Positions 13,314-49,535 of a stretch of DNA of 64,000 bases are shown in pieces. Positions within the stretch are counted from its first letter, which is position 1. Each line of letters begins with the position of its first letter. The stretch spans positions 186,001 through 250,000 of IMG/VR virus record IMGVR_UViG_3300028393_000019; one strand, given 5' to 3'. The notes under the pieces are model-generated. The model searched no databases and was not told the DNA's origin. It saw nothing but the letters and a program-made list of their open reading frames with translations. The translations under genes and the position numbers were made by a program.

Positions 13314-13327
13314 GTGTGCAGGGTGGT

Positions 13328-13333: not shown

Positions 13334-13337
13334 TACC

Positions 13338-18988: not shown

Positions 18989-18990
18989 AA

Positions 18991-19545
18991 ATGGAATTTA
19001 TAGGAAACTACAAAGAATGGTTGAAGCCAGAGTGGGTTGAATATGTTCTAAATAATGATGGCTATGAAATGCCTAAATGGGAGTTTGAACAGAACGGAAT
19101 ACTTGAAGCCATCGAGCGAGGTGATCGCGCAGAGTTTTGTGAGTTTCAAAAGAAGTATGAAGAAGTAGGATTCAAACACAATTCTCTACTTTACTATTTG
19201 TTTGAGGAAGATAATTTTCCGTTTGAAGTGCCCTTGCCCCCTTTTATAAATTTAAAAGAAGGGCAAGGATATTATTGGAATTTATTTAAATACAAACCAG
19301 GAAACTTACTACCAGTGCATAGTGACCGAGTAACTAAGTTTGAAAAAAATTGTAAACGTTACTGGATGAGTTGGCTTGACTGGCAGGACGGCCATATTTT
19401 AATTTACGAAAATCAAATGATTGCACCGTATAAGGCTGCTGATACTTACATCTTTACTAATCCATTCGGAACACACGGCGCCGCTAACATTGGCTTAACA
19501 CCAAGAATATCATTTCAGATTACTATCTACGATGAGCAACATTAA
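18991..19545 (+). CDS. Fe(II)/2OG-type cupin oxygenase, array copy 4
   Basis: LPVHSD, DGHIL, THGAANIG..PR. Confidence 0.7.
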   Translation: MEFIGNYKEWLKPEWVEYVLNNDGYEMPKWEFEQNGILEAIERGDRAEFCEFQKKYEEVGFKHNSLLYYLFEEDNFPFEVPLPPFINLKEGQGYYWNLFKYKPGNLLPVHSDRVTKFEKNCKRYWMSWLDWQDGHILIYENQMIAPYKAADTYIFTNPFGTHGAANIGLTPRISFQITIYDEQH

Positions 19546-20323: not shown

Positions 20324-20855
20324 ACACTTAATCAATCCAGAATGGATAGAGTTATTGTTATCAACAAAAGGTATCCCTATCAGCCCTTGGAAAGATCATA
20401 AAGTAGACGAGGTTAAAGAAGAAATTGATTTTGATCAATTGTTGACATCTACACAAGATGAACGAGATTTGTTTGTGACTGGACCGTATGGGGAAAGTCT
20501 CATCATGGCTGAGATGTTCACTGAAGAGAATATACCGTTTGTACTAGATTTCAAAGAAGTTCAACATCTATTTGCAGGTGACTGGTGGATCATAAAACAA
20601 CTGCCAGGGCAGTATATGCCGATACATAGAGATACTGCATTATTCTACCAAGAAAATAATAGAATATGGATGCCGCTTATAGACTATCAACAAGGTCACA
20701 TTTTTATTCATGAAGGTAATTTTATAAAAGATTACAAGGCCGGTGACATGTTTAAATATTTCAAAGATAACGATTTGCATGGTAGTATAAATTTAAGCTC
20801 GACCCCCAGAATTGTTTTGCAAATAAGCCAGAAACCTATACCATATGATCGTTAA
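20301..20855 (+). CDS. Fe(II)/2OG-type cupin oxygenase, array copy 5
   Basis: MPIHRD, QGHIF, LHGSINL..PR; start moved to 20301 (MKYCGNYK). Confidence 0.7.
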   Translation: MKYCGNYKHLINPEWIELLLSTKGIPISPWKDHKVDEVKEEIDFDQLLTSTQDERDLFVTGPYGESLIMAEMFTEENIPFVLDFKEVQHLFAGDWWIIKQLPGQYMPIHRDTALFYQENNRIWMPLIDYQQGHIFIHEGNFIKDYKAGDMFKYFKDNDLHGSINLSSTPRIVLQISQKPIPYDR

Positions 20856-21354
20856 TAATTTAAAAGTTGCTATAACAGGGCATACCGGAGAGGTAGGTTC
20901 TGCGTTATCTAAAGTGTTTACCGATGCTGGACATAGTATAGTCGGCATATCAAGATCTACTGGGTTTGATTTAAACAACAATGAAAACTACAAAGATATT
21001 ATTTCCACAATTGATCAATGCGATGTGTTTATCAATTGTTGTCAAATAGGTCAAGATGCACTACTACGGAATGTTTGGAATTTATGGCAGGGCTGTGAAT
21101 ACAAACGGATTATCAACATCAGTGCAATCAGCGCATCTGACCCTGCTGAGAATAAAGAGTATTATCAAAATAAAAGAAACTTAGAATCAACGTTCTGGGA
21201 ATTACTTAAAATAAATCAGTTCCCACCTATGACTATCGTTAGAGCAGGCCTAAGAGAACATGACCCTAGTTACGATAACTGGGCAAAGTTCTTAATGAAA
21301 TTGCTAAATGAACCTGAATATCATTTTTTAGAAGTGAGTTATTTTAAATTATGA
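20845..21354 (+). CDS. Short-chain dehydrogenase/reductase-like protein
   Basis: VAITGHTGEVG Rossmann motif, DVFINC, IINIS, YxxxK (YYQNK). Confidence 0.7.
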   Translation: MIVNNLKVAITGHTGEVGSALSKVFTDAGHSIVGISRSTGFDLNNNENYKDIISTIDQCDVFINCCQIGQDALLRNVWNLWQGCEYKRIINISAISASDPAENKEYYQNKRNLESTFWELLKINQFPPMTIVRAGLREHDPSYDNWAKFLMKLLNEPEYHFLEVSYFKL

Positions 21355-22136
21355 TTACTAATTTAAAACTTATACTCGAAAATAAATGTGCAACATTTGA
21401 AAGTTGGACCAATACGTTTGACAATTTTATAAACCATCAACCGAGAGATTCCGATAGTGTACTAGAAAAATATAAAAATTCTCCTGATTTCTGTACTTGG
21501 GAAATAGACGAAGACATTACAACTATTAGCTATCGTTATGTACATAGATTATGCAGTAATGGGGACATGCATTGTTTACAATCATACACTGAAGAAAAAT
21601 ATCAATCGTTAATAAATTACAAAACATTAGGTCTAGAACTTCCTATTTTAGAAATAATGTCTGTTGAGAATGATTTGTTGTATACAAAATTTACCAGCCC
21701 CACTGGGGACTTAGGATATCCACCACCCTATGTGTTATTGAACATAATGTATAACAGCAGTAATGTTATAGAGGAATTCCGTAACTATATTACTGTTATA
21801 ATTGATAATTATATAGAATTAACTAAGAAATGTATACAACACAATATACCATTTTTTAGCCCGGCTCGGACTATGACTAGCCATTACTTTGATAATATGT
21901 TTTATTTTAAAGATACTGTATTCTTTTCTAGCAACAAAGAGCTAACGGTTGAAGATATAGCAGATATCATTAGTAGTAACATTGACGGGTTTAGAAGAGC
22001 AAAAGGAATAATATCAGCATATCAAGGCAGAGCTGATTCACATCCGGATACTGTTGATTTGATTTATAAAGAAATAGAAAATCTAAAAAGTTATGCGAGG
22101 ACGCAATGTCTAAATTTAAAGAATGTAACTCTGTAA
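21351..22136 (+). CDS. Hypothetical protein
   Basis: 261-aa ORF coupled by ATGA overlap. Confidence 0.55.
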   Translation: MITNLKLILENKCATFESWTNTFDNFINHQPRDSDSVLEKYKNSPDFCTWEIDEDITTISYRYVHRLCSNGDMHCLQSYTEEKYQSLINYKTLGLELPILEIMSVENDLLYTKFTSPTGDLGYPPPYVLLNIMYNSSNVIEEFRNYITVIIDNYIELTKKCIQHNIPFFSPARTMTSHYFDNMFYFKDTVFFSSNKELTVEDIADIISSNIDGFRRAKGIISAYQGRADSHPDTVDLIYKEIENLKSYARTQCLNLKNVTL

Positions 22137-22287
22137 TAGCACACTACAAACACAATAAAAAATACATAGAGCTTGTTACTAGCCTATATGTATTTTCTGA
22201 AGCACAATCTACAGGGTCACCTACCCATTACGATGCAACTACTTGGCAATGGGGTGACAAAACTATTTTAATTCAAGAAGTAGGAAT

Positions 22288-23259
22288 TCATCCTGAGATT
22301 GAATAAGAAGGTATAGCTCTAGTTTGTCCGTTAATTGTAACTTTGATATATTTGACATCGTCAAAATTTACATTTTCTTTGCCTACTTCTTCTAACTCTA
22401 ATTCTAGAGTCGATGAAATCTTAGCACCATAGTAAGCATACAGTTTTCCGCTATTGGAAATCTTAACTCTTACCTCTGGCATAGCACCCGGGGTAGTACG
22501 TGTCACCCAATTCATTGCAGTTGGTAGGAATTCCTCAGTCGGATTACCGTCAACTGTAGCTGTCTGAGCCATGCCCCATTCCCATGGATCGTCACCGGCT
22601 TTACCTAACCAATCAAACGCATATATAAAATCGCCATCTTGCAATGGTAACGGATTTTCTGGGGTTCCTCTAAATCTGTTAAACGCCGTCCAACCTGCTT
22701 TATAAGGATTATTATCATAGCTGTCAAATCTCAATGCTGGCTGTTTAAAATTACCTTGCTGAGTGATTAATATACCTGTTGATTTTGTATCAATTGTAAG
22801 AGGCACTGGGTAATCAAATCTACATCCGCCCGACATCCACCAATCTTGCGATTTGTCTCGATCTTCAACAGCATTGTTATTGTTTACAATCTTTATACCT
22901 TTGGCAGATAAAACTCCTCTAGAGTCGATAGATACATACTCTTCTGTAAAGATTCCCTTAGTTGCTCCCAATATCAAACTAGCGTCTACGACGTCTTGAC
23001 CATCAACAACATCTTGTGTTACAATAGCACTTACAAATGCCGCATTAACATATGACGAATCGTTACCGCCTTTAGAGTATGCAGTAAATTTGAGCACACC
23101 GAGCTGATCCCCATTTTGGCAATTCTCAGGGGCATCAAGTGTTCCCCTTGAACTACCAATTTTAAGGCTAGGTTGGTTCTTTTTGAAGCCGCCGGTTATT
23201 CCACGAATGAATAGTGGAGTATCGAAGCCGTCTGTTTCAAGTATTTTCTCGTTGTTCAT
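22288..23259 (-). CDS. Fibre-like virion structural protein
   Basis: Two RGTxxxP...xGDxL motifs of the kind seen in phage tail fibres; start moved to ATG 23259, downstream of TATAAATA. Confidence 0.5.
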   Translation of the reverse strand: MNNEKILETDGFDTPLFIRGITGGFKKNQPSLKIGSSRGTLDAPENCQNGDQLGVLKFTAYSKGGNDSSYVNAAFVSAIVTQDVVDGQDVVDASLILGATKGIFTEEYVSIDSRGVLSAKGIKIVNNNNAVEDRDKSQDWWMSGGCRFDYPVPLTIDTKSTGILITQQGNFKQPALRFDSYDNNPYKAGWTAFNRFRGTPENPLPLQDGDFIYAFDWLGKAGDDPWEWGMAQTATVDGNPTEEFLPTAMNWVTRTTPGAMPEVRVKISNSGKLYAYYGAKISSTLELELEEVGKENVNFDDVKYIKVTINGQTRAIPSYSISG

Positions 23260-23278
23260 AGTATAAGTAATGTAAGCA

Positions 23279-23286
23279 TATTTATA
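23279..23286 (-). promoter_or_regulatory. T4-type late promoter TATAAATA
   Basis: Exact consensus on minus strand upstream of the fibre-like gene. Confidence 0.65.
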
Positions 23287-23299
23287 GTGGAAATTAATA

Positions 23300-24868
23300 A
23301 TGAAAATTTTAATCATCGGTGGTGGAACAGCAGGATGGATGACTGCCGGATATTTGGCCAAATATCGGGGCGGTGAAAATATTACACTTGTAGAGTCAGC
23401 AACTATACCTAAAATTGGTGTTGGGGAAAGTGTAACTCCGCACGTTTGTAACTTTTTTAAAGAAATCGGAATTGACGAATTTGACTGGATGAAAGTTACA
23501 GGTGCTGTACACAAATATGCCAATAAATTTGTCAATTGGCAGGGCACCGGTGATGAACAATATTTCAGTTTCAACTACACAGTACCTACCGAAAACTTTT
23601 ATAAAGATATACCAGTGAACAAAACGCAAGAAGATTTCACTAGAGTTGTTGATGCCCCTAGGAGCATTGACACAGTTAGCGAACTTTGCCAATCTAAAAT
23701 TTTTAATAGATTTGACAAATATTTTAATCCACAGTTTCACTACATGGAACAAAATGTAATGCCCTATAAAGATGGTCAAGATTTGTTGAACCAGCCATTT
23801 AGCCATGCGCACCATATCAATGCAGAATTAGCAGGCCCTTACATTAAAGATAAAATAGCAATACCTGCAGGTGTAAAACACGTTGTCAACGATGTTGTTA
23901 AAGTAAATATTGAAGGTAATCGCATAACATCAGTTTTGTTAGGTGATGGTACAGAATTAACCGCAGACTTGTACATAGACTGTTCTGGTTTTGCACGAGT
24001 ACTTTCAAATGCGCTTGGGTGGAAATTAGTAGAAAAAAATACACCAATTGACCGTGCATGGGTCTGTCAAACAGAGTATGTCGATCCAGAGACTGAGATG
24101 GTTAACTATACTCAAAGCATTGCTGAACCCTATGGCTGGCGATTTAAAATAGGTGTGTATCATCGTATGGGTAATGGCTATTGCTTTAGCAGTAAGCACA
24201 CCACTGAAGAAGAAGCACTAGATCACTTTATAAAACAAATTGGTCCGCAACGTAGACCACCTCGATTGATTAAATGGACTCCAACTAGATTAGAAAAATT
24301 CGGAGATGGTAACTGTGCGGCTATCGGACTAAGTTGCGGATTCACTGAGCCGTTAGAAGCCAATGCACTCTACACTATTATTACAAGCATACGTAGGCTG
24401 AATAATGTACTAGATGAAAGTACGTTAGATTTCAGTACCTACAATGAAAAAATGGCGTATACTATTGACGACATATCAGATTTTATTCTAGTACACTATA
24501 CATTGAGCAATAGATCAGATACTAAATTTTGGACTGACATGCAAGAATTAGGTAAAAAATTAAAACATCGAGAACTAGTTGTTAAAAAGATATACGAAGA
24601 AAAAAACACAATGAAATCAGCTGTTGAAGGCTACACAATGTTTCCGGACTATATGTGGGCACAATTAGCAGTATCATGGGGAATACCCTTTGACACGAAG
24701 TCAACAAGTGCTATAGAAAAAGAATTGTCTAAACAATATTTTGAATACAGCGAACACAAGCACCGGCTAGTATCTTCAATATGCAAAAATAATTATCAAT
24801 GGCATAAAGAAAATATCTTTAATAACATGCCAAACACTGAATGGGAGAAACAATGGATTTCGAAATAA
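23300..24868 (+). CDS. Tryptophan-halogenase-family flavoprotein
   Basis: GGGTAGW, IGVGES, GAVHKYANKFVNW, LYIDCSGF, GFTEPLE. Confidence 0.9.
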   Translation: MKILIIGGGTAGWMTAGYLAKYRGGENITLVESATIPKIGVGESVTPHVCNFFKEIGIDEFDWMKVTGAVHKYANKFVNWQGTGDEQYFSFNYTVPTENFYKDIPVNKTQEDFTRVVDAPRSIDTVSELCQSKIFNRFDKYFNPQFHYMEQNVMPYKDGQDLLNQPFSHAHHINAELAGPYIKDKIAIPAGVKHVVNDVVKVNIEGNRITSVLLGDGTELTADLYIDCSGFARVLSNALGWKLVEKNTPIDRAWVCQTEYVDPETEMVNYTQSIAEPYGWRFKIGVYHRMGNGYCFSSKHTTEEEALDHFIKQIGPQRRPPRLIKWTPTRLEKFGDGNCAAIGLSCGFTEPLEANALYTIITSIRRLNNVLDESTLDFSTYNEKMAYTIDDISDFILVHYTLSNRSDTKFWTDMQELGKKLKHRELVVKKIYEEKNTMKSAVEGYTMFPDYMWAQLAVSWGIPFDTKSTSAIEKELSKQYFEYSEHKHRLVSSICKNNYQWHKENIFNNMPNTEWEKQWISK

Positions 24869-25461
24869 TCAAAGTCCGTAACAACTTATGTAAAATTAAG
24901 TTAACGACACCGTATAGTTACGCACAGTTGTTAGCCGAATTTGAAAAAGAAGAATGGGTTAACCATGCTGACTATGAAGAACGTGCTGGTGATCCACACC
25001 TGTGCAGGTCGGCACTTCCTTATCCTAAAAGTATTATCTTACAGGAAATTGTAAACTACTTGTCGTCAGACGAAGTTAAAAGAAAGATCATAGACACTAT
25101 GTATGAGCTATTTCCAGGAATACAAAATATGTGGGATGGTTGGTCGAACAATAAAATGTTTAATTCAACGCTTTGGGGAGGACAATTTCTCAAAGACGAA
25201 CCTGGTTTTATAATTGAACCGCATATTGATACTAGACTACAAATATTAACATCACTAGTCTATTTTATAGAAGACAACGATCCTAAACAAGCAACTGTGT
25301 TTTACACAGACAAGAATCGTTCCGATCCGTGGACAGCTGAAACAGGTGTTGGGGTGGGGACTTTGCATATTAACGATTATGATGTATGGCACGAAGGTTC
25401 TAACAGATCGGATAAAGATCGATACCTCATGAGCTTAGGACTAATTGTAAATGTTAAATGA
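24841..25461 (+). CDS. Prolyl-hydroxylase-like Fe(II)/2OG oxygenase
   Basis: IEPHIDTR ... VWHEG...DRY. Confidence 0.7.
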   Translation: MGETMDFEIIKVRNNLCKIKLTTPYSYAQLLAEFEKEEWVNHADYEERAGDPHLCRSALPYPKSIILQEIVNYLSSDEVKRKIIDTMYELFPGIQNMWDGWSNNKMFNSTLWGGQFLKDEPGFIIEPHIDTRLQILTSLVYFIEDNDPKQATVFYTDKNRSDPWTAETGVGVGTLHINDYDVWHEGSNRSDKDRYLMSLGLIVNVK

Positions 25462-25867
25462 ATGGATATCTAGAATTTCAACACCTAAGGAAGAACTAGG
25501 TGGAATGAGTGTGTGTCCTTATGCTAAAAGTGCAGAGTATGAATTAATCGAAACTGACGGTAGTGATATAAATCCCCCACCCTGGGACTTTGAACTTATT
25601 GTATATAAACTACCCGATAGTTATTCTATAGAAGAGCTCAACGATATAGCAGTAGAATACAATAACTTATTTCCGGAGATGGTGTTTTTGCCCGATCATA
25701 AAGATAAAGCAACATTTATAAACGGCATTCCTACTAACAACGGTGTATATAATCTTATGCTATGTCAATGGCGTGATAATTTATCAAAGGCTCGAGAAAA
25801 ATTATCTAATACTGCCTATTATACCTACTGGGCAGAAGACTATTTGAAAGAAATATTAAACACATGA
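25451..25867 (+). CDS. DUF1415-like hypothetical protein
   Basis: N-terminal W...CPYAK resembling DUF1415 (LCPFA). Confidence 0.4.
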   Translation: MLNEWISRISTPKEELGGMSVCPYAKSAEYELIETDGSDINPPPWDFELIVYKLPDSYSIEELNDIAVEYNNLFPEMVFLPDHKDKATFINGIPTNNGVYNLMLCQWRDNLSKAREKLSNTAYYTYWAEDYLKEILNT

Positions 25868-26868
25868 TCTGGACTGAATGGGATCCTTTAGAGTCAATTA
25901 TTGTCGGTGACTGTTTTACCGATAGCGACCATCCTGGATTAAAAACGATCTTAAAAGAAACTAAAGAAGATCTAAATACTCTAGCAAATTACTTAACTAG
26001 TTTAGGTATAAAAGTCTATCGACCTAACGTTGCGCATAACTCTGCAATGGCTCCTATTGTTCCAAGAGATCAATACCTAGTGTATGGCGAAACAATATAT
26101 CAAACATACACATCAATGCCTGATAGATTCAATGATAGTTTAAACTACTTAGGCATATTTAGAGAGCTATTTCAACAAGGTCATAACTGGATCAGTCAAC
26201 CGCCGCCTGTGCTTGCACCTTTAAACTCTACAGACAAGTGGTGGAATGATGGTAAGCACATCTATCACGATCTAAACAAAGATAAAATACTGTGGCATAC
26301 TGCCACCATGTTTAAATGTGGAGATGCATTAATAACTAACAAACAAGGTCCAGGAACGCTACTTGGACTAGAATGGATGAAGCGTAACTTGCCCGGTACA
26401 CGTATTATTGAAAACAATAAGTGGGGCCACATTGATCACGGGTTTTTTATGATTGACGATGATACTGTTATTTGTATCAACCAGTCTTGGGTTCCCGAAG
26501 TGTTACAATCTAAAACACTTATTGAAATTGAAGAATATATTGAAGTTTTAGATTATAGTAAAATTGTAGAATCTTTTTCTACTACCAGTGGTACACTAAG
26601 TCAAGAGTGGATAGACAAATGGCTCAACGAGTGGAAGGGGTATGTGCAAGATGTTGCGTTTGACAGTAATGTGCTGGTAATAGATTCTAAGAATATCTTG
26701 TTCTCTAGTGAACAACCTAAGCTGTTTAATTTTTTAAAACAAAAAGGTATTACATGCCACGTAGTAAACATGCGTCATAGCATGTTTTGGGAAGGCGGAA
26801 TACATTGCCTAACACTAGATGTTAGTCGACGTGGAGAGAAGCGGCGAGTCGTTCCTGTAACTTTGTAA
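25864..26868 (+). CDS. Amidinotransferase (glycine/inosamine-phosphate amidinotransferase family)
   Basis: WTEWDPLESIIVG, PRD, GHID, GGIHCLT catalytic Asp/His/Cys. Confidence 0.9.
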   Translation: MIWTEWDPLESIIVGDCFTDSDHPGLKTILKETKEDLNTLANYLTSLGIKVYRPNVAHNSAMAPIVPRDQYLVYGETIYQTYTSMPDRFNDSLNYLGIFRELFQQGHNWISQPPPVLAPLNSTDKWWNDGKHIYHDLNKDKILWHTATMFKCGDALITNKQGPGTLLGLEWMKRNLPGTRIIENNKWGHIDHGFFMIDDDTVICINQSWVPEVLQSKTLIEIEEYIEVLDYSKIVESFSTTSGTLSQEWIDKWLNEWKGYVQDVAFDSNVLVIDSKNILFSSEQPKLFNFLKQKGITCHVVNMRHSMFWEGGIHCLTLDVSRRGEKRRVVPVTL

Positions 26869-27976
26869 AATATTCTGTATCAGCAATCAAAGGCAGTACT
26901 AACATAAGGTTATCCTGCCCATTATTCCATACTCCTATATGCAAACCGTTGTCATAGAATGTTTGTTCAGGAGTTGACTTAATATCTATATCAAACATTA
27001 ATCCGTAGTTTCTAAAAGTTAACCCCATACTAGTAAAAAGTCTGGTCGCAGTATCGACAGTTGCAGTGTATTGATTTAATAAATCTTCTGTTTCTAATAT
27101 TTCTAAATATTTTAAAGTTGAATAAATTCCACTTAATGAAAATGTATAGGTGAACCCGTGTCCCAAAAACTCATGCTTTACTACTTCGTTAACACGATCG
27201 CTTACTAGCGTAGCACTTAAAGGAAAGTATCCCCCAGTCAATGCCTTGCCCATGGTAAAAATATCAGGATCCAACTCAGTATCGAATCCAACAAACTTAC
27301 CTGTCTTGCCACCACACATGGCAATATCATCTAAAATAAAAATCACATCGTGATCTCTGCATGTTTGTCTAAGTTCTCGCCAAAAATCTTTAGTATACTG
27401 TTTAAGACCCTTATTCCACGAGCATGTTTCCATAACTAGGCAACAGGCTGTTTTAGTTTTAACAGCGTCTATTAATTCTTCTTGATTCAAAGCAATACAA
27501 TTTTCAACAGGATGTTTGGTCATATACTCTAATTGGCCGATGCCGGATGTTAGGTAAGTACTTCCGTGGTAAGAATTTTTAACACCGAGTATAGTGTGCC
27601 TAGGGTTACCTTTAGCTTCGTGATATATTTTGGCTAATTTAATTGCACCCTCGACTGCGTCACTTCCACTTAGGGCAAATATACTTCTATAACCACCAGT
27701 GATATCATATAGTTTATTTGTTAGATCTATAACTGCCTGATTAGTGGTCATGTATTCGCCGCCAGCGAATGGATTGTCTAACATTTTATCAGCAACATAG
27801 TGTATAATGTCTTTACGATCAAATCCTAGTAAAAAACAGCCGCAGGATCCTAGACTTAAATCTATTAAATCTTTGCCGTTTTCTACAAATCCAAATCTTG
27901 TATAATTATCAATCTTTCTTGCGTTAGAATGATCGTAGTTGTAGTTAAAAGGGAACAAGAGCTTTAAATTTTTCAT
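26822..27976 (-). CDS. Class III PLP aminotransferase (BioA-like)
   Basis: SGSDAVEGA, SYHGST, DDIAMCGGKTG, MGKALTGGYFPLSA. Confidence 0.9.
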   Translation of the reverse strand: MKNLKLLFPFNYNYDHSNARKIDNYTRFGFVENGKDLIDLSLGSCGCFLLGFDRKDIIHYVADKMLDNPFAGGEYMTTNQAVIDLTNKLYDITGGYRSIFALSGSDAVEGAIKLAKIYHEAKGNPRHTILGVKNSYHGSTYLTSGIGQLEYMTKHPVENCIALNQEELIDAVKTKTACCLVMETCSWNKGLKQYTKDFWRELRQTCRDHDVIFILDDIAMCGGKTGKFVGFDTELDPDIFTMGKALTGGYFPLSATLVSDRVNEVVKHEFLGHGFTYTFSLSGIYSTLKYLEILETEDLLNQYTATVDTATRLFTSMGLTFRNYGLMFDIDIKSTPEQTFYDNGLHIGVWNNGQDNLMLVLPLIADTEYFTKLQERLAASLHVD

Positions 27977-27980
27977 ACAG

Positions 27981-27998
27981 TATTTAACAAGGTAAATA
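27981..27998. promoter_or_regulatory. Divergent late-type promoter pair
   Basis: TAAATA on minus (27981-27986, 4 nt to ATG) and plus (27993-27998, 7 nt to ATG). Confidence 0.65.
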
Positions 27999-28005
27999 TG
28001 GTGTC

Positions 28006-29922
28006 ATGAAAAATGTCTATCTTATACAAACTGAAATTACTTCCGGACCCTCTAATGAGCACTACCTACCATTCAGTGTAGGATGTATTTGGGCCTATGC
28101 AAACCAATTTGATTATGTGAAAAATAACTATAAATTGCAAGATGTTATTTGGCGGAGAGATAGACAAAAAAATGTAATTGAAAAGATCATCGACCCTAGT
28201 ATCATTGGATTTAGTTGCTACGTATGGAATCATAAATGGAATCTAACCTTAGCTAAGAAATTAAAAGAACGTTTTCCAAACTGTCTAATAGTGTTTGGTG
28301 GTCCTAGTGTTAATGAAGAATGGCTCAAATACGATTTTATCGATGTTGCAATGTTTGGCGAGGGAGAAGTTGCATGGGCTAATCTTTTAAAGATGAATCT
28401 TAATAACGAGACTATTCCGAGATATTGGAATAACCCGAGACAAACAGATATTGAAAATTATCCTAGCCCTTACACTACAGGGTTCTTTGATAAAATTATT
28501 GCAGACAATCCAGATATTAGTTGGTTTATGATGCTAGAAACTAACAGAGGATGTCCTTATCACTGTACGTTTTGCGGCTGGGGAGCCGACTATCTTAACA
28601 AACTAAAAAACTTTAACCTACATAGGGTTGAGGAAGAAATCAAATGGGCTATAACACATAACATACATTGGATGTTTGTGATCGATGCTAACTCAGGTAT
28701 AATGAAAGAACGTGATGTCGAAGTAGCGTGGATGATCCGCAGAGCTATAGAAGCACCCAACAGCAAAATTAGACGTGTAACCTTTAACCATGCTAAAAAT
28801 TTAAATGAGCATTGTTTTGAAATGGAAAAGATTATTCAAGCATGGACTTACGGTTTAGAAATGGCTATACAAAGCATGCACCAGCCCACACTAGATGCTG
28901 TGAAAAGAATTAACATGGGTATGAACAATTTAGAACGTGCTTATGCCTTATGCCGTAAACACGGTATTAGATACTACACAGAGATGGTTTTAGGTTTACC
29001 TTTAGAAACCAAGGACACTTATATTAATGGCCTAATGAGATTAATGGAATTAGGACAACACGACAGCGTTAAAACTTATCCTGCTACTGTTATTCCTAAT
29101 AGTGAAATGGACAGTGAAGAGTATAGAAACAAATACGGAATTAAGTTGATATATCCTAAAGATATGTATCGTAGTCCCGAAGAACGCATATGGGACGACG
29201 AAGATAGTAGTCATGAAAATATTGCCATGGTGTCGAGCACAAATACTGCTACCAGCCAAGATATTGCAGATTCATTAGCGTACAGTTGGATGATGAGTCA
29301 ATTTCATTATTTAGGAATAACACAACTTACTTCACGGTACTTGTATGAAATGCATAATGTTCCATACCGTCAATATTATGATGCATTATACAACGCAATT
29401 AAGAACGACATTATAGGCGGTCCTATACTAAATGATGTAGAAGAAATATTTGTAAATTATTTCACTTACGGTGAAATGCCTGTAGGTGAAAAATGGAAGA
29501 ACGTAGTTGCATTGACTATGCCCGAAAGTTACGGTATGGACGATATATTTGAAAACAAGAATCATTTTATAGACCTCGGAGTTACCGTTGGAAACTTATT
29601 TCATACTATAGATCCAAGTGTCATAGAATTACAGTATGCTTTTATGTTGGATGAAAGCAAATCATATCCATTCATTCTAGAATCAGATATAGATATTGAT
29701 AGATGGGAACGTTTATCATGCTCATATTCGGTTAATAGGCGTTACATGGTTAGTCACATGCATGACCAAATGTATCAAAAATATTTGCTTAAAACTGATA
29801 TTGCAAATATTAATAATCCTTATGTTGAAACCGACATAGAAGATTCATATAAAGGCAATAAGATCTCAGTCATTCCTATTTTACCTATACCTACAACTAC
29901 CGCTAGTGGGAGAGTTATGTAA
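28006..29922 (+). CDS. Cobalamin-binding (class B) radical SAM protein
   Basis: N-terminal B12 domain (IGFSCYVWN, VFGGP, GEGE) and ETNRGCPYHCTFCGW. Confidence 0.9.
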   Translation: MKNVYLIQTEITSGPSNEHYLPFSVGCIWAYANQFDYVKNNYKLQDVIWRRDRQKNVIEKIIDPSIIGFSCYVWNHKWNLTLAKKLKERFPNCLIVFGGPSVNEEWLKYDFIDVAMFGEGEVAWANLLKMNLNNETIPRYWNNPRQTDIENYPSPYTTGFFDKIIADNPDISWFMMLETNRGCPYHCTFCGWGADYLNKLKNFNLHRVEEEIKWAITHNIHWMFVIDANSGIMKERDVEVAWMIRRAIEAPNSKIRRVTFNHAKNLNEHCFEMEKIIQAWTYGLEMAIQSMHQPTLDAVKRINMGMNNLERAYALCRKHGIRYYTEMVLGLPLETKDTYINGLMRLMELGQHDSVKTYPATVIPNSEMDSEEYRNKYGIKLIYPKDMYRSPEERIWDDEDSSHENIAMVSSTNTATSQDIADSLAYSWMMSQFHYLGITQLTSRYLYEMHNVPYRQYYDALYNAIKNDIIGGPILNDVEEIFVNYFTYGEMPVGEKWKNVVALTMPESYGMDDIFENKNHFIDLGVTVGNLFHTIDPSVIELQYAFMLDESKSYPFILESDIDIDRWERLSCSYSVNRRYMVSHMHDQMYQKYLLKTDIANINNPYVETDIEDSYKGNKISVIPILPIPTTTASGRVM

Positions 29923-31082
29923 TGTTAATGGGCTTTAATCAAACTAACATAGACCGATTACTAGCAAGTATAAATGGTACAGTTTTAGATCCAACAGTAA
30001 GCCTATGCCATCATTGCCATAGACATATACCAGCATGGCGCTACCATAAAGATAATCAGGTGTTTATAGCCAAGTCATGTCCCATACATGGTATTAGCCA
30101 TCATATGATCGAATCTGACTATGAGTTTTATGCTAATCTATATTACACCCAGGATAATCCAGATTTTAATTTTAATGGCGGAGTACTTATCGAAGGTAGT
30201 GACCGCTGTAATTTAGAATGCCCACATTGTTACCATTTACCAGAAAACGATGCCCGCGACCCTTCTATAGAAGAATTGCTCGATCAAATACGAGATATGC
30301 CGGTAGGCGAGGATGGAGTACATAGAATCATCCTCGCCGGTGCTGAAAGTACCTTACGCAAAGACTTTCCAGAATTGATAACAGCTATCCGTGAGTTAGA
30401 TCCCGAAATGGATGTTAGTGTAATGACTAATGGCATACGTTTCAATGACAGCGATTTTATTCATAAATGTGTTGAAGCTGGACTTGCAGGTGTTAACATT
30501 GGGCTTAATCATCCAAGTTACATCGATCACGAAACTGTAAGACGTAAACAAGTTAGTGCTATTGAAAACATGCACCGTGAAGATATCAAGATAGGTTACA
30601 TTAGTTATACTATGGTAGACTTCAGTGAGCTTGATTACATACTAACTGAGATTACTAGTAATCCTTGGACTCCTAAAAATTTCCGCATACGTAATGGTGC
30701 AGAAATAGGACGTAATGCCAGCACCGAACAACCGTTTGTTAGCAACTTATACAAACGTGCGGAGCAATGGTGCAAGGATCATAGTAAACAGTTTGAACGA
30801 ATCATAGAAGCAGACAATAATATCTATCATGTTATGGTTAAGATTGAAGATAAAATTGTGCGATTAATCAGCTGGTGCGATGAAACCAATATTGATATGG
30901 AAGAATTGCGTAGCGGACCTTGGTGTAACTTTGTACCCGACGGTATTACAAACTTCTTACATCAGATTATACGCAGAGATGTGTTTAAAAATAAAGGACT
31001 AGCCTTACCGGATAGCCCTCCTAGTCGATATAAATTTAATCGCACACCCGATAAGTCAAAACTTAATTTGCTAAATCTATAA
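29922..31082 (+). CDS. Radical SAM protein with Tes/MJ0619 (COG1964)-like N-terminal metal site
   Basis: SLCHHCHRHIPA...KSCPIHG, CNLECPHC, TNGIRF, C-terminal PDG. Confidence 0.8.
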   Translation: MLMGFNQTNIDRLLASINGTVLDPTVSLCHHCHRHIPAWRYHKDNQVFIAKSCPIHGISHHMIESDYEFYANLYYTQDNPDFNFNGGVLIEGSDRCNLECPHCYHLPENDARDPSIEELLDQIRDMPVGEDGVHRIILAGAESTLRKDFPELITAIRELDPEMDVSVMTNGIRFNDSDFIHKCVEAGLAGVNIGLNHPSYIDHETVRRKQVSAIENMHREDIKIGYISYTMVDFSELDYILTEITSNPWTPKNFRIRNGAEIGRNASTEQPFVSNLYKRAEQWCKDHSKQFERIIEADNNIYHVMVKIEDKIVRLISWCDETNIDMEELRSGPWCNFVPDGITNFLHQIIRRDVFKNKGLALPDSPPSRYKFNRTPDKSKLNLLNL

Positions 31083-31419
31083 AGCCATTTGACCTATCAA
31101 GGAATTTAGTTTTAATATTTAAAATATTAAACTTATTCAAAACTTTAACAACATCTGGTACATTAAATTTTTTACAACTATAAACATCTAGTTGTATTAG
31201 ACCAGTATCCCAAGTGTGCATGACAATATGACTAGTAGTTATAGCCATGAGTGCTGTGTATCCTTCGTTATCTAAAACTTCTGATCTATAGACATATGGC
31301 CCTCCTAGTATTTCCATGTCAATAGTTGATACAATATCTAGTAGAATGTTTTTAACATCTAATTCAGACAATTGTGTTTCAGCAGTACCTTGTATTAATA
31401 GGTGCAAATGATCTAACAC
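31063..31419 (-). CDS. speD: S-adenosylmethionine decarboxylase proenzyme (pyruvoyl-dependent)
   Basis: GYTALMAITTSHIVMHTW and DVYSC; GTG start. Confidence 0.8.
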   Translation of the reverse strand: MLDHLHLLIQGTAETQLSELDVKNILLDIVSTIDMEILGGPYVYRSEVLDNEGYTALMAITTSHIVMHTWDTGLIQLDVYSCKKFNVPDVVKVLNKFNILNIKTKFLDRSNGFIDLAN

Positions 31420-32013
31420 TTAAGGCTTCCTTCCTATGATCATGTAACGTGTGTACAGGGGTAATTTCATTTCGCCGCCCCAAAGAAAATGTAATCCACA
31501 AGTTTCCTTAAATTCATCAAATGATTTATGCCACCGCACATGCTCGGGGATATTATAATCATTACTTTGGATAATAATCAAACTACCGTTAGGCATTCTA
31601 TCCAACCATTTATCGTATTGTGCTTGTGTTAAGTGTTCACAGCTAGTATTAATAATAATATCTGCAACAGAAATTACATCGCACATATCTGCCGTATACG
31701 CTTTGAACCGACCTTCAATTTCTTCACCCTTGTTCATTAGCGTAGCAATAGGTTCGCAGGTTGGATCAATGTCAATACTGCGAATAGTAGTAATGGGAAT
31801 GTTGCTCTGAAATAACATGCTGGCAAGTGTACCAACCCAGCCGCCGAAGATGTCTATGCTAGATGCAAAATGCACATGCTCATCTAGACAATCAATCAAC
31901 CATTCTTTGCTTTTTAATTGCCCCGACCAAAAGGCATCCATAGTACGCATAGGGTCCGGGCTTTGACGGATGGCCTGCATCCAATGGTGTAAATGGTTTG
32001 TATCTATCTGCAT
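31420..32013 (-). CDS. Class I SAM-dependent methyltransferase-like protein
   Basis: IDIFGGWVG glycine motif, IRSIDID, TADM, IINTSCEH. Confidence 0.65.
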   Translation of the reverse strand: MQIDTNHLHHWMQAIRQSPDPMRTMDAFWSGQLKSKEWLIDCLDEHVHFASSIDIFGGWVGTLASMLFQSNIPITTIRSIDIDPTCEPIATLMNKGEEIEGRFKAYTADMCDVISVADIIINTSCEHLTQAQYDKWLDRMPNGSLIIIQSNDYNIPEHVRWHKSFDEFKETCGLHFLWGGEMKLPLYTRYMIIGRKP

Positions 32014-32960
32014 TTTGGTATCTTGCTGTCCGCACTACTAACACATCTAGTAGTCACGCATTTTTGTGGCACAGAAAACAAAGTAAATTTTTCTATCGTG
32101 CCCAGTGCGGCTTCGTGGCAACTGTAAGCACGTTTGACTTCCGTACCTTTTATTATAACACTCTGATAACCTGCATTACAAGTCCAATTGGCAAATTGAT
32201 TAAACCCCAGTGCATTAAACCGTTCTGCTTGATCTATAAAATAATTTTTATCACCATCCATTAAACGGATTTGATAACCTTCCTGCTGTTCAAAATCGTT
32301 TTGCATTATATCAACCATCTCAGCTGTGTAGCCTTCCACTATGGCGGTGGCACTGTCATTGCTTTGTGGTTTAAGTGTTACATTAATTCCACGAGCTCGA
32401 AATCGTTCACAGCGTTCTAGTGTTTCAAAGAACAGTTCTGGCACCATAACTTGATTAACAGTTACATGAACCCGCTCGTTCATTAACTGTAAACACTTGT
32501 CACCGAACTCGTGCTCCTTGGCGAACTCTGCATGAAAGCTGGCTGTAATACTGCGGCGCTGTAGACAATCAGTGATGCTACACCAGTTTTTCCACCAGCT
32601 GGGTCCCGGACTCAAATTGGTAGTCATATGTATACTTTGGTAGGGACTTTCTAATTCATCTATATGTTTGATCAATTCGGGCAACTGTTTGTACGCAGTA
32701 GGTTCACCTCCTGAGAAGCTCCAGTGAAATTGGGTGAATCCGTTCAAACGAGCTTGACGTTTTATCTCGTCGACTGTAGTCTTATAGACTTCTAAACTTT
32801 GGTAATCCAAATTGTCGCTTCGGGCATAGGGCCAACAATAGCTACATTTGTAATTACAAAATCTACCTAGGATCCAACTTATGTTAAATAATGGGCGATC
32901 CAACATTGTTTGTTGCCCAAAATGCGTTATGTCTTTGAAAGGAATGATTGCGAAGTTCAT
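32004..32960 (-). CDS. Radical SAM protein with C-terminal twitch-like domain
   Basis: CNYKCSYC, FSGGEP, WTCNAGYQS...C...CVTTRC. Confidence 0.9.
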   Translation of the reverse strand: MNFAIIPFKDITHFGQQTMLDRPLFNISWILGRFCNYKCSYCWPYARSDNLDYQSLEVYKTTVDEIKRQARLNGFTQFHWSFSGGEPTAYKQLPELIKHIDELESPYQSIHMTTNLSPGPSWWKNWCSITDCLQRRSITASFHAEFAKEHEFGDKCLQLMNERVHVTVNQVMVPELFFETLERCERFRARGINVTLKPQSNDSATAIVEGYTAEMVDIMQNDFEQQEGYQIRLMDGDKNYFIDQAERFNALGFNQFANWTCNAGYQSVIIKGTEVKRAYSCHEAALGTIEKFTLFSVPQKCVTTRCVSSADSKIPKCR

Positions 32961-32966
32961 TGACAG

Positions 32967-32972
32967 TATTTA
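32967..32972 (-). promoter_or_regulatory. Late-type promoter motif TAAATA
   Basis: 6 nt before ATG 32960. Confidence 0.55.
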
Positions 32973-32994
32973 CAAATGATAGTATAATATACAT

Positions 32995-33090
32995 GTAGAC
33001 GTGAGTGGAACTTGGTATACCTCCAGCTTGCTGGGACTGGGCCTGGCCCTTAGGGTGGCTTTGTAGGTTCGAATCCTACCGTCTACACCA
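32995..33090 (+). tRNA. Class II tRNA-like gene with Leu-type body and irregular anticodon arm (anticodon undetermined, possibly GCT)
   Basis: 7-bp acceptor GTAGACG/CGTCTAC, A73 and encoded CCA, T-arm GTAGG-TTCGAAT-CCTAC, D-loop GGAACTTGGTA, long variable arm. Confidence 0.8.
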
Positions 33091-34014: not shown

Positions 34015-34199
34015 GATTAAATAGAATTATGACACATTGGACTATAACAGTTGAAGAAGCAGATGACGGTAGCGGAGATCTAGTTCTCCCACTGCCGCAG
34101 GAGATGTTGGATTTGCAAGGATGGAAAGAAGGAGACACATTGGAATGGAACGATCTAGGTGACGGCTCGTGGACCATTTCAAAGGCAACAAATGGCTAA
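34011..34199 (+). CDS. AbrB/MazE-like DNA-binding protein
   Basis: DLVLPLPQEM...GWKEGDTLEW swapped-hairpin pattern. Confidence 0.6.
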   Translation: MRLNRIMTHWTITVEEADDGSGDLVLPLPQEMLDLQGWKEGDTLEWNDLGDGSWTISKATNG

Positions 34200-34410
34200 A
34201 GACGATATTATAGAATTGACAGGTTCAGTAGAAGAAGTATTGCCAGGCAACATGTTTAGAGTTAAAGTTGAGAACATGCCCAACCCGTTGCTGTGTTACA
34301 TGGGTGGCAAATTGAAGCAAAACAAAATTAGGATCATTCTGGGTGACAACGTTCGTTTAGAAGTTAGTCCATATGATCTTACCAAGGGCAGAGTAACGTA
34401 TAGGTTGTAA
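34192..34410 (+). CDS. infA: Translation initiation factor IF-1
   Basis: MAKDDIIELTGSVEEVLP...IRIILGDNVRLEVSPYDLTKGRVTYR. Confidence 0.95.
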   Translation: MAKDDIIELTGSVEEVLPGNMFRVKVENMPNPLLCYMGGKLKQNKIRIILGDNVRLEVSPYDLTKGRVTYRL

Positions 34411-42938: not shown

Positions 42939-42940
42939 AA

Positions 42941-49530: not shown

Positions 49531-49535
49531 TTTCC

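What the first reader, a model, noticed from the sequence alone, without database searches (positions are those of the whole stretch)
28006..31082. Coupled B12-radical SAM and Tes/MJ0619-like radical SAM pair
Seen: the genes overlap by 1 nt, and the second has the SLCxxCxxxIPA...KxCPxHG N-terminal site. Known: this N-terminus characterises the COG1964/MJ0619 family, which includes the lipid C-C coupling enzyme Tes/GDGT-MAS, and GDGT ring synthases are B12-binding rSAMs. The phage protein is shorter (386 aa) and seems to lack part of the C-terminal Cys set. Inference: C-C bond formation or methylation on alkyl chains, possibly linked to the desaturase; a phage-encoded version would be unusual.
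Basis: partly seen in the sequence, partly recalled or inferred. Interest (0 to 1): 0.6.

Follow-up and report, generated by a model that had tools for sequence, protein, structure and literature searches.

The report
Phage B12 methylase plus Tes-fold enzyme
A lake phage carries two tightly coupled radical-SAM genes, a TokK-type B12 methylase and a stripped-down relative of the archaeal tetraether lipid synthase, inside a conserved six-gene cassette that looks built to make a methylated, amine/guanidine-bearing compound rather than to modify lipids.

Summary
Genes 28006-29922 (638 aa) and 29922-31082 (386 aa) overlap by one base (TAATG). The second gene has the C-x2-C-x20-C-x2-H site and a CxxxCxxC motif.

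The pairing is not chance. In all 25 related viral loci that hold both genes, the stop and start overlap by 1 or 4 nt.

Gene 1 is a TokK/ThnK/CysS-type cobalamin radical-SAM C-methyltransferase (TokK E 6e-72; both signature Trp kept).

Gene 2 has the GDGT-MAS/Tes fold (Z 31 against 18 for the next solved structure). It lacks the ligands of both auxiliary [4Fe-4S] clusters that Tes uses for C-C coupling. It scores 75 bits against the Tes cut-off of 450 and sits in a clade apart from Tes/TrsS-like proteins. It is a short form that I found only on virus-like contigs.

The conserved partners are an amidinotransferase, an omega-type aminotransferase, a class-I SAM methyltransferase and a further radical-SAM enzyme. 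A pyruvoyl decarboxylase and a halogenase are variable extras. The fatty-acid desaturase lies 27 kb away and is not part of the module.

The most likely product is a C-methylated amino/guanidino small molecule or appended group. The lipid reading is not supported. The product itself is unknown.

The parts
28006..29922 (+). P0001, 638 aa: cobalamin-dependent radical-SAM C-methyltransferase of the TokK/ThnK/CysS/KedN5 type. It has an N-terminal B12-binding Rossmann domain and the cluster motif C183-x3-C187-x2-C190.
   Evidence: Pfam B12-binding plus Radical_SAM. NCBIfam KedN5 family E 2e-45. PDB TokK 7KDX E 6e-72 over residues 18-493 and CysS E 9e-30. W74 and W192 align with TokK W76 and W215, which are conserved only in TokK/ThnK/CysS.
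29920..29924 (+). TAATG stop/start overlap that couples the two genes.
   Evidence: A 1-nt or 4-nt overlap is kept in 25 of 25 related loci.
29922..31082 (+). P0002, 386 aa: short-form, auxiliary-cluster-free radical-SAM enzyme with the GDGT-MAS fold. It has a rubredoxin-like site C29-x2-C32-x20-C53-x2-H56 and a SAM cluster C96-x3-C100-x2-C103.
   Evidence: AF2 model pLDDT 94.8. Foldseek 7TOL E 5e-18. VIA Z 31.3 with 337 residues aligned. Tree.
25864..26868 (+). P0283, 334 aa: amidinotransferase (pentein fold) with the catalytic-type Cys315 in G-I-H-C-L-T-L-D. Conserved module member.
   Evidence: Profile against PDB: HsvA polyamine amidinotransferase E 6e-32, StrB1 9e-28, AGAT and SxtG 1e-22. 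Atlas lead. Synteny.
26822..27976 (-). 384-aa class-III (omega/amine) aminotransferase, divergent from P0001 with 29 bp between the start codons. Conserved module member.
   Evidence: Pfam Aminotran_3 E 2e-44. Nearest PDB matches are omega-transaminases, putrescine and polyamine:pyruvate transaminases and BioA. Synteny.
31420..32013 (-). P0281, 197 aa: class-I SAM-dependent methyltransferase fold. Conserved module member.
   Evidence: No Pfam, NCBIfam or PDB sequence hit. AF2 model pLDDT 87.6. Foldseek finds the small-molecule methyltransferases TleD, AtmM and NodS at about 1e-9. Synteny.
32004..32960 (-). P0282, 318 aa: radical-SAM enzyme (C35-x3-C39-x2-C42) with four invariant C-terminal Cys (C261, C281, C301, C306), a possible auxiliary cluster. 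Conserved module member.
   Evidence: Pfam Radical_SAM E 1.6e-12. Only weak generic hits to viperin, anSME and QueE. Invariant Cys from alignment A6. Synteny.
31063..31419 (-). 118-aa AdoMet_dc-family (pyruvoyl-type) decarboxylase homolog whose 3' end overlaps the 3' end of P0002 by 20 nt. Variable accessory.
   Evidence: Pfam AdoMet_dc E 2e-12. Present in only some loci. In L042 it follows the P0002 homolog directly, with a 4-nt overlap, and precedes the amidinotransferase.
25451..25867 (+). P0554, 138 aa, unknown function (phrog_10325). It usually sits immediately upstream of the amidinotransferase.
23300..24868 (+). 522-aa flavin-dependent halogenase (PrnA/RebH/VirX1-like). Variable accessory next to the module.
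   Evidence: Pfam Trp_halogenase E 3e-93. PDB PrnA E 2e-56 and VirX1 E 9e-53. Present in only some loci.

Best explanation
The two genes are a real, translationally coupled enzyme pair at the centre of a conserved six-gene tailoring cassette found on tailed-phage contigs. Shown: P0001 is a TokK/ThnK/CysS-type cobalamin radical-SAM enzyme. P0002 has the GDGT-MAS (Tes) fold with the rubredoxin-like Cys3His site and the SAM-binding [4Fe-4S] motif, but none of the ligands of the two auxiliary clusters. The conserved neighbours are an amidinotransferase, an omega-type amine transaminase, a class-I SAM methyltransferase and a second radical-SAM enzyme with four extra Cys. Inferred: the cassette builds or decorates a polar, nitrogen-rich compound. 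A carbonyl (possibly made by the second radical-SAM enzyme) is transaminated to a primary amine. The amidinotransferase turns an amine into a guanidine, using arginine as donor. P0001 adds one or more methyl groups to an unactivated sp3 carbon through methylcobalamin. P0002 uses a 5'-deoxyadenosyl radical for a single-cluster step on the same intermediate, such as epimerisation, rearrangement, dehydration/decarboxylation or adenosylation. P0002 cannot carry out the cluster-sulfur-mediated C-C coupling of Tes. The scaffold is most likely a small amine of the polyamine, agmatine or amino-acid-derived kind, given the HsvA-like amidinotransferase, the polyamine-type transaminase relatives and the recurrent AdoMet-decarboxylase-like partner. 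The product and its target are unknown.
For: Coupling and synteny: the 1- or 4-nt overlap is present in 25 of 25 loci. The six genes co-occur down to 54% identity of P0002. In L022-L024 the amidinotransferase, B12 and Zn-ribbon genes form one co-directional run. In L042 the P0002 homolog, an AdoMet_dc gene, a P0554-like gene and the amidinotransferase form one overlapping operon without the B12 gene. P0001: TokK E 6e-72, CysS E 9e-30, KedN5 family E 2e-45, and both TokK-class signature Trp conserved. P0002: the metal-site spacing is identical to that of GDGT-MAS, C9x2C12x20C33x2H36. GDGT-MAS is the top structural match at Z 31.3 against 18.4 for MoaA. No other conserved Cys exists in 115 representatives. 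Neighbours: amidinotransferase profile hits to HsvA, StrB1, AGAT and SxtG with the catalytic Cys aligned; amine, putrescine and polyamine transaminase relatives; a class-I methyltransferase fold. Two lake metatranscriptome libraries hold contigs 100% identical to pieces of the module, and one of them spans the gene junction.
Against: No substrate or product was observed, so every chemical step is inferred from homology and gene order. The amidinotransferase scores almost as well against the inosamine-phosphate enzyme StrB1 as against HsvA, so the scaffold could equally be a sugar or cyclitol. The AdoMet_dc-like gene and the halogenase are not universal. P0001 scores far below the KedN5 family cut-off (155 against 700 bits), and its last 145 or so residues do not align with TokK. 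The RNA-library contigs could derive from carried-over viral DNA. A lipid or membrane substrate for P0002 is not excluded by any direct test, because the model's pocket was not analysed.
Confidence: 0.55

Rival explanations
1. One reading: the pair acts on lipid alkyl chains, doing Tes-like C-C coupling or Grs/Hpn-like methylation, in concert with the phage fatty-acid desaturase.
For: GDGT-MAS is the closest solved structure to P0002. The record encodes two FA desaturases. An FA_desaturase lies 2 kb from a 41%-identical P0002 homolog in another phage contig, L059. B12 radical-SAM enzymes are known to methylate hopanoids.
Against: Both auxiliary clusters of GDGT-MAS are missing, including the one that forms the carbon-sulfur intermediate. 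The Tes HMM scores 75 bits against 450 and covers only the N-terminal 230 residues. P0002 falls in a separate clade from Tes/TrsS-like long forms. The desaturase is 27 kb away and absent from the conserved module. P0001 is much closer to TokK, CysS and KedN5 than to lipid B12 radical-SAM families. The conserved partners carry out amine and guanidine chemistry.
Confidence: 0.08
2. The same cassette, but the scaffold is a sugar, cyclitol or nucleotide-sugar. This would follow aminoglycoside logic (oxidise, transaminate, amidinate, C-methylate) and give an amino/guanidino sugar for a glycan on the virion, the host surface or DNA.
For: StrB1, the inosamine-phosphate amidinotransferase, scores E 9e-28. 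More distant homologs of P0001 (38% identity) sit between an SDR epimerase/dehydratase and DegT-like genes in another phage. The window holds an SDR-like fragment at 20845-21354 and a separate nucleotide-sugar block at 46.7-55.9 kb. Oxidation by a radical-SAM dehydrogenase followed by transamination is known from 2-deoxystreptamine pathways (my own knowledge of BtrN).
Against: The module contains no glycosyltransferase, kinase or nucleotidyltransferase. The record shows no GT2 or NTP_transferase and only one GT1, about 47 kb from the pair. The transaminase is of the omega/polyamine type, not the DegT sugar type. The best amidinotransferase hit is the polyamine enzyme HsvA.
Confidence: 0.15
3. 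The cassette sculpts a group already attached to phage DNA (base hypermodification), giving a cationic, methylated side chain that protects the DNA or helps package it.
For: Phages are known to tailor amino acids appended to 5-hmdU using radical-SAM isomerases, PLP enzymes and flavoenzymes (PMC8989533). Cationic side chains are typical of such bases. The module is confined to large phages.
Against: No TGT/DpdA, TET/JBP or ThyA-type hydroxymethylase was found in the 265-kb record, although the record is only 72% complete and the TET search had no positive control. No kinase- or transferase-type hallmark gene lies next to the module. TokK-class enzymes and amidinotransferases are known only from small-molecule pathways.
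Confidence: 0.12
4. The enzymes modify a ribosomal peptide or a virion protein (RiPP-like maturation).
For: The window is rich in radical-SAM/SPASM genes, Asp/Arg-hydroxylase-like and 2OG oxygenases and a halogenase. P0001 also hits the RiPP C-methyltransferase model TIGR03975 (E 9e-19), and the transaminase hits the daptide aminotransferase model (E 1e-28).
Against: P0001 is far closer to TokK and KedN5. P0002 has no SPASM, twitch or RRE-type element. I did not see a conserved small precursor gene in the module, but I did not search for one systematically. Amidinotransferases are not known to act on peptides.
Confidence: 0.08

Closest known systems
GDGT-MAS / Tes (MJ0619), archaeal tetraether lipid synthase (PDB 7TOL/7TOM)
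   Same: It shares the N-terminal rubredoxin-like Cys3His site with identical spacing, the CX3CX2C radical-SAM core and the overall fold, including much of the C-terminal part (Z 31.3, rmsd 3.7 A, 337 residues aligned).
   Different: P0002 is about 110-140 residues shorter. The linker that carries the [Fe4S4]N ligands is 22 residues shorter and has no Cys. No conserved C-terminal Cys remains for [Fe4S4]C. Identity is about 21%, and the HMM score is 75 bits against a cut-off of 450. P0002 lies in a separate clade and in a phage context with amine and guanidine enzymes instead of lipid genes.
TrsS-like / long-form bacterial relatives (e.g. Chitinophaga, Burkholderiales; NF045646)
   Same: They belong to the same superfamily and share the N-terminal site and radical-SAM core. 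They are the best relatives that the scan of cellular genomes found.
   Different: These proteins are 470-480 aa long and score about 330 bits to TrsS and 270-290 bits to Tes over their full length. P0002 matches them only over residues 18-232 or so, at 26-33% identity.
TokK / ThnK (carbapenem C6 alkylation) and CysS, KedN5: iterative cobalamin radical-SAM methylases
   Same: P0001 shares the B12 Rossmann domain, the radical-SAM core and both class-specific Trp residues. It aligns with TokK over 476 residues at E 6e-72.
   Different: The C-terminal substrate-recognition domain diverges. P0001 is below the KedN5 family cut-off, is encoded by a phage, is always fused by gene overlap to a Tes-fold enzyme, and lies in no beta-lactam or enediyne context.
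HsvA (phevamine pathway), StrB1 (streptomycin) and AGAT/SxtG amidinotransferases
   Same: The neighbour P0283 shares the pentein fold signature and the catalytic Cys motif with them.
   Different: Identity is low, there is no ATP-grasp, PKS or kinase partner, and P0283 is instead partnered with three radical-SAM enzymes.

Membership tests
Tes / GDGT-MAS tetraether lipid synthase (NF045702) | N-terminal mononuclear rubredoxin-like site C-x2-C-x20-C-x2-H | tested here: met
   P0002 has C29, C32, C53 and H56 with the same spacing as C9, C12, C33 and H36 of GDGT-MAS. Pfam PF23545 E 4.9e-13.
Tes / GDGT-MAS tetraether lipid synthase (NF045702) | Radical-SAM CX3CX2C cluster in a partial TIM barrel | tested here: met
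   C96, C100 and C103. Radical_SAM E 9e-18. The barrel is modelled at pLDDT 94.8.
Tes / GDGT-MAS tetraether lipid synthase (NF045702) | N-terminal auxiliary [4Fe-4S] cluster (C73, C77, C80 plus His) | tested here: not met
   P0002 has no Cys between residues 54 and 95. Its linker is 17 residues long against 39 in GDGT-MAS.
Tes / GDGT-MAS tetraether lipid synthase (NF045702) | C-terminal auxiliary [4Fe-4S] cluster that forms the substrate carbon-sulfur intermediate | tested here: not met
   No Cys after C103 is conserved in 115 family representatives. C284, C319 and C335 (numbering as) are each Cys in only 4-18 of 116 rows.
Tes / GDGT-MAS tetraether lipid synthase (NF045702) | Score at or above the curated HMM cut-off (450 bits), full length | tested here: not met
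   75.4 bits, covering only residues 90-222 of P0002; 47 bits in the genome scan.
Tes / GDGT-MAS tetraether lipid synthase (NF045702) | Groups with Tes homologs in a phylogeny | tested here: not met
   P0002 lies in a 52-row short-form set with 99% support. The Tes-like P0412 and the TrsS-like long forms lie in a separate 31-row clade behind a branch with 100% support and length 0.77. Caveat: no biochemically proven Tes sequence was available for the tree.
Tes / GDGT-MAS tetraether lipid synthase (NF045702) | Hydrophobic lipid-binding pockets, and lipid coupling activity | not tested
   The model's coordinates could not be analysed for cavities with the tools at hand, and activity needs experiments.
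Rubredoxin-site radical-SAM superfamily (PF23545 + PF04055; COG1964-type) | Zn_ribbon_HMPTM domain followed by a radical-SAM core | tested here: met
   Both domains score above the gathering thresholds, and all listed homologs carry the same pair of domains.
TokK/ThnK/CysS-type cobalamin radical-SAM methylases (P0001) | N-terminal B12-binding Rossmann domain plus CX3CX2C | tested here: met
   PF02310 at 35.8 bits against a cut-off of 32.1. C183, C187 and C190 align with the TokK cluster motif.
TokK/ThnK/CysS-type cobalamin radical-SAM methylases (P0001) | Class-specific Trp under the corrin (TokK W76) and Trp after the third Cys (TokK W215) | tested here: met
   P0001 W74 and W192 align with them. 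The TokK paper states that these two residues are conserved in TokK, ThnK and CysS only.
TokK/ThnK/CysS-type cobalamin radical-SAM methylases (P0001) | NCBIfam KedN5-family cut-off (700 bits); C-terminal substrate domain | tested here: not met
   155 bits over residues 19-380. Residues 494-638 do not align with TokK. P0001 is therefore a relative of the class, not a member of the named equivalog-level family.
TokK/ThnK/CysS-type cobalamin radical-SAM methylases (P0001) | Cobalamin binding and (iterative) methyl transfer to sp3 carbon | not testable with these tools
   Needs purified protein.
Amidinotransferases (pentein; P0283, module partner) | Homology over both halves and the catalytic Cys near the C-terminus | tested here: met
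   Profile hits to HsvA (6e-32), StrB1, AGAT and SxtG. The invariant C315 in G-I-H-C-L-T-L-D aligns with the F-H-C-A-T-L-D motif of HsvA.

The most novel reading that the evidence does not exclude
Freshwater and marine tailed phages carry a virus-specific offshoot of the tetraether-synthase fold. It has lost both auxiliary clusters and acquired a new single-cluster radical reaction. Working hand in hand with a TokK-type iterative B12 methylase, an amine transaminase and an amidinotransferase, it makes a previously unknown branched, guanidino-bearing metabolite or macromolecular decoration during infection.
Probability: 0.35. Interest if true: 0.8.

Novelty: new variant of a known kind. Interest (0 to 1): 0.6.

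Why it matters
Cobalamin radical-SAM methylases of the TokK class and Tes-fold enzymes are known from antibiotic pathways and archaeal membranes. They are not known from phages.

Here they form an obligatorily coupled pair in a cassette that recurs in many uncultured phages from lakes and oceans, and it may be transcribed. If the cassette makes a methylated guanidino compound, it would be a new kind of phage-encoded chemistry, with possible roles in DNA condensation, host manipulation or defence evasion.

It would also be a new reaction type for the GDGT-MAS fold. It shows as well that the Tes-like N-terminal motif alone does not predict lipid coupling, which matters when Tes homologs are used as lipid biomarker proxies.

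Tried and rejected
- blastn of 26000-33000 against cultured phages gave no match. tblastn of P0001, P0002, P0282 and P0283 against cultured phages gave only weak generic hits.
- P0281 has a 33% homolog in Ralstonia phage RsoM2USA, but every neighbour there is annotated as hypothetical.
The 10-sequence alignment A2 worked.
- Context look-ups for the distant homologs P0300, P0312 and P0330 returned contigs of only 2-3 kb and were uninformative.
- A profile of P0281 against PDB sequences found nothing. A fold search was needed instead.
- Promoter-like sites in 25.4-33.4 kb are no more frequent than in shuffled sequence, so I could not define a transcription unit.
- Hallmarks of DNA hypermodification (TGT/DpdA, Tet_JBP, ThyA type), GT2 and sugar nucleotidyltransferase were not found in the record. 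The record is 72% complete, and the Tet_JBP search had no positive control.
- I considered and rejected a link to the desaturase. It lies at window 48-635, is not syntenic with the pair, and is absent from the 34 related loci within 10 kb.
- I did not run a complex prediction for P0001 and P0002. The two chains exceed the size limit uncut, and the report does not claim that they bind.
- I could not analyse cavities in the P0002 model, because model coordinates are not exposed to scripts.
Full report
**Setting.** The window is bases 186001-250000 of a 265,680-bp IMG/VR virus record, linear and estimated 72% complete. The record encodes a 1172-aa tail sheath, ribonucleotide reductase and virion proteins, so it is a large myovirus. 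Its sheath is closest, at about 44%, to jumbo phages such as Atu_ph07 and PA5oct. The DNA occurs in freshwater lake metagenomes.

**The observation.** ORFs 28006-29922 (P0001, 638 aa) and 29922-31082 (P0002, 386 aa) are on the + strand.
- The TAA stop of the first gene shares one base with the ATG of the second (TAATG), and a GGGAGAG run precedes it.
- P0002 reads S-L-C29-x-x-C32-x-x-x-I-P-A ... K-x-C53-P-x-H56-G, then C96-x3-C100-x2-C103.
- Pfam calls P0002 Zn_ribbon_HMPTM (E 4.9e-13) plus Radical_SAM (E 9e-18), and P0001 B12-binding plus Radical_SAM.
- I fetched 34 related viral loci holding a P0002 homolog at 52-100% identity. Of these, 25 also hold a P0001 homolog directly upstream, and in all 25 the stop and start overlap by 1 nt (TAATG) or 4 nt (ATGA/TTGA). 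Three loci are cut off upstream, and six (L042-L047) truly lack the B12 gene.

**What P0001 is.**
- Its best curated family is the KedN5 family of methylcobalamin-dependent radical-SAM C-methyltransferases (E 2e-45, 155 bits, below the cut-off of 700). RiPP, ladderane, hopanoid and BchE-type B12 radical-SAM models score only 36-67 bits.
- Among solved structures it matches TokK at E 6e-72 over residues 18-493 and CysS at E 9e-30.
- In that alignment the cluster motif C183/C187/C190 matches that of TokK. P0001 W74 and W192 match TokK W76, which lies under the corrin, and W215.
- These enzymes add one to three methyl groups in sequence to unactivated sp3 carbons.
- The last 145 or so residues of P0001, which in TokK recognise the substrate, do not align. 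The substrate is therefore different.

**What P0002 is.**
- Its nearest curated models are TrsS (84 bits, cut-off 490) and Tes (75 bits, cut-off 450). Both cover only the N-terminal 230 or so residues.
- The only significant PDB sequence relative is GDGT-MAS, 7TOL (E 4e-17).
- An AlphaFold2 model built from 92 homologs is confident (pLDDT 94.8, pTM 0.93).
- Foldseek ranks GDGT-MAS first (E 5e-18) ahead of MoaA (4e-9).
- The second-look aligner gives Z 31.3, rmsd 3.7 A and 337 aligned residues (model 18-359) for GDGT-MAS, against Z 18.4 for MoaA.
- The fold, including most of the C-terminal part, is therefore that of the tetraether synthase.

The GDGT-MAS paper (PMC9433317) describes four metal sites:
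- a rubredoxin-like iron (C9x2C12x20C33x2H36);
- the radical-SAM cluster;
- an N-terminal auxiliary cluster (C73, C77, C80 and a His);
- a C-terminal auxiliary cluster, whose sulfur forms a bond to the lipid carbon during C-C coupling.

P0002 keeps the first site with exactly the same spacing, and it keeps the second. It has no Cys between residues 54 and 95, and its linker there is 22 residues shorter. None of its later Cys is conserved. In 115 full-length representatives of the family, only C29, C32, C53, H56, C96, C100 and C103 are conserved (alignments A1-A3). The Tes mechanism is therefore not available to this protein.

**Family and distribution.**
- The word search found 368 clusters related to P0002 (at 90% clustering; the 120 listed are 61-90% identical to it). 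All listed ones are 380-410 aa long with the same two Pfam domains, and many come from Tara and lake samples.
- The exhaustive search found 2170 representatives at E<1e-3 and 63 at E<1e-30. Full-length matches of 320-390 aa extend down to about 24% identity.
- A scan of one genome per 185,579 prokaryotic species returned only long forms (470-480 aa; Bacteroidota, a Burkholderiales MAG). These match residues 18-232 or so at 25-33% identity and score about 330 bits to TrsS and 270-290 bits to Tes.
- In a maximum-likelihood tree of 118 sequences, P0002 lies in a 52-row set of short forms with 99% support. The Tes-like P0412 (222 bits to the Tes model) and the TrsS-like cellular proteins lie in a different 31-row clade behind a branch with 100% support.
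- Contigs that carry close and distant homologs look like phages.
- P0002 thus belongs to a short, auxiliary-cluster-free branch of the superfamily that appears to be virus-borne. That scan rests on two peptide patterns, so it is not an exhaustive proof of absence from cells.

**The surroundings.** I compared the window's proteins with the 34 loci. Six genes travel together down to the 54%-identity tier (L035-L041).
- 25864-26868, P0283. A profile of P0283 and seven homologs hits the amidinotransferases HsvA (E 6e-32), StrB1 (9e-28), AGAT and SxtG. The invariant C315 in G-I-H-C-L-T-L-D aligns with the catalytic-site motif.
- 26822-27976(-), a class-III aminotransferase. Its nearest structures are omega/amine:pyruvate, putrescine and polyamine transaminases and BioA.
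- P0001 and P0002, the pair described above.
- 31420-32013(-), P0281. It has no sequence-level annotation. It folds confidently (pLDDT 87.6) as a class-I SAM methyltransferase and resembles small-molecule methyltransferases. Its family is very large, about 3989 clusters.
- 32004-32960(-), P0282. It is a radical-SAM enzyme with four invariant extra Cys.

Variable extras are an AdoMet_dc-type decarboxylase (31063-31419), a PrnA/RebH/VirX1-like halogenase (23300-24868), a small protein P0554 that usually precedes the amidinotransferase, and 2OG-oxygenase-like genes.

Gene order supports the functional link:
- In L022-L024 the amidinotransferase, B12 and Zn-ribbon genes are contiguous and co-directional.
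- In L042 the B12 gene is absent. There the P0002 homolog is followed, with overlapping stops and starts, by AdoMet_dc, a P0554-like gene and the amidinotransferase.

**Mechanistic reading.**
- Shown: the enzyme classes and their conserved linkage.
- Inferred: a tailoring pathway for a polar, nitrogen-rich compound.
  - A carbonyl is transaminated to an amine.
  - An amine is amidinated to a guanidine.
  - P0001 adds one or more C-methyl groups through methylcobalamin.
  - P0281 adds a heteroatom methyl group.
  - P0002 performs a single-cluster 5'-deoxyadenosyl-radical step on the same intermediate.
- The polyamine-type relatives of both nitrogen-handling enzymes, and the recurring AdoMet_dc-like gene, make a small amine scaffold the most likely.
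- A sugar or cyclitol scaffold is the main alternative. It is supported by StrB1 similarity and by sugar genes next to distant P0001 homologs in L050.
- Short contigs 100% identical to the module occur in two lake metatranscriptome libraries, and one spans 29844-30059 across the junction. This is consistent with co-transcription but does not exclude viral DNA in the library.

The structural kinship to Tes and the sp3-methylation chemistry of the B12 partner are supported. Lipid coupling is not supported, for these reasons:
- the clusters needed for it are missing;
- the protein fails the family score and the tree test;
- the neighbours are not lipid enzymes;
- the desaturase lies at window 48-635, 27 kb away and outside the conserved module.

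One caveat remains: an FA_desaturase lies 2 kb from a 41% homolog in another phage contig, and I did not analyse the pocket of the model.

**Other rivals.**
- DNA hypermodification is plausible in principle (PMC8989533). However, no DpdA/TGT, TET/JBP or ThyA-type gene was found in the record.
- A RiPP-type role fits the radical-SAM/SPASM- and oxygenase-rich window. P0001 is nevertheless TokK-like, and no SPASM or precursor element accompanies the pair.

**Literature.** I found no paper describing this pair or module in phages. A recent cyanophage paper notes an amidinotransferase, an aminotransferase and a radical-SAM gene as unexplained 'antibiotic synthesis genes' (PMC12801897), which may be a related island.

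**Verdict.**
- The feature is real, conserved and phage-borne.
- P0001 is a new phage member of a known methylase class.
- P0002 is a new, reduced variant of the GDGT-MAS fold, and its reaction is unknown.
- The cassette as a whole has not been described.

Noticed in passing
window 6864-13313: This is a block of five further radical-SAM genes: 6864-8168 with SPASM, 8161-9057, 9834-10820(-), 10817-12229(-), and 12222-13313(-) with weak SPASM. With the genes at 28006, 29922, 32004 and 46760, the window holds at least nine radical-SAM genes.
   Followed up: partly
window 23300-24868: A flavin-dependent halogenase close to PrnA/RebH and to the cyanophage halogenase VirX1 (E 9e-53) lies next to the module. 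It is present in only some related loci.
   Followed up: partly
window 17228-20855 and 4104-4649; also L022-L024, L043, L047: There is an array of mutually related genes of about 180 aa. Their homologs in related loci match 2OG-FeII_Oxy_5, and several window copies match Asp_Arg_Hydrox weakly. The genes are multi-copy in every related phage locus.
   Followed up: partly
window 46760-55926: A separate nucleotide-sugar-type block holds a radical-SAM gene (46760-48121), an RmlC-like isomerase (49536-50081), a split TPP-dependent E1 (50078-50707 and 55387-55926) and three SDR epimerase/dehydratases (52040-54947). It suggests a branched or deoxy sugar pathway.
   Followed up: no
window 48-635(-); G000 169728-170336(-); L059 5840-6619: The record has two FA_desaturase genes, neither near the pair. 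In another phage contig a desaturase lies 2 kb from a 41% homolog of P0002.
   Followed up: partly
L042 2136-5191: This is a variant operon without the B12 gene. The P0002 homolog, an AdoMet_dc homolog (E 6.5e-18), a P0554-like gene and the amidinotransferase follow one another with overlapping stops and starts.
   Followed up: yes
L050 5923-10909: A 38%-identical homolog of P0001 in another phage-like contig sits between an SDR epimerase/dehydratase, a DegT-like fragment and an unrelated 382-aa gene. GTP cyclohydrolase I and PTPS lie nearby. The B12 enzyme family therefore also occurs without the Tes-fold partner.
   Followed up: partly
window 32960-32988 (+): A perfect 12/12 sigma-70 consensus (TTGACA, 17 nt, TATAAT) lies in the 160-bp gap between the module's last gene and the + strand gene at 33120. 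Promoter-like sites overall are at chance level.
   Followed up: no
window 26500-32500: Two lake metatranscriptome libraries contain short contigs 100% identical to parts of the module, and one spans the P0001/P0002 junction (29844-30059). DNA carry-over is not excluded.
   Followed up: partly
window 34159-34410, 40604-41302, 42037-43531, 61048-62772: The window also carries other host-like genes: an eIF-1a/IF1-like small protein, a Bax1-I family membrane protein, MazG-like PRA-PH, peroxiredoxin, ClpP, PTPS (QueD-like) and UvdE.
   Followed up: no
G000 250226-263476, 17130-28235, 8307-17084: The record has giant ORFs of 4416, 3701 and 2925 aa. The first begins 226 bp after the window ends.
   Followed up: no
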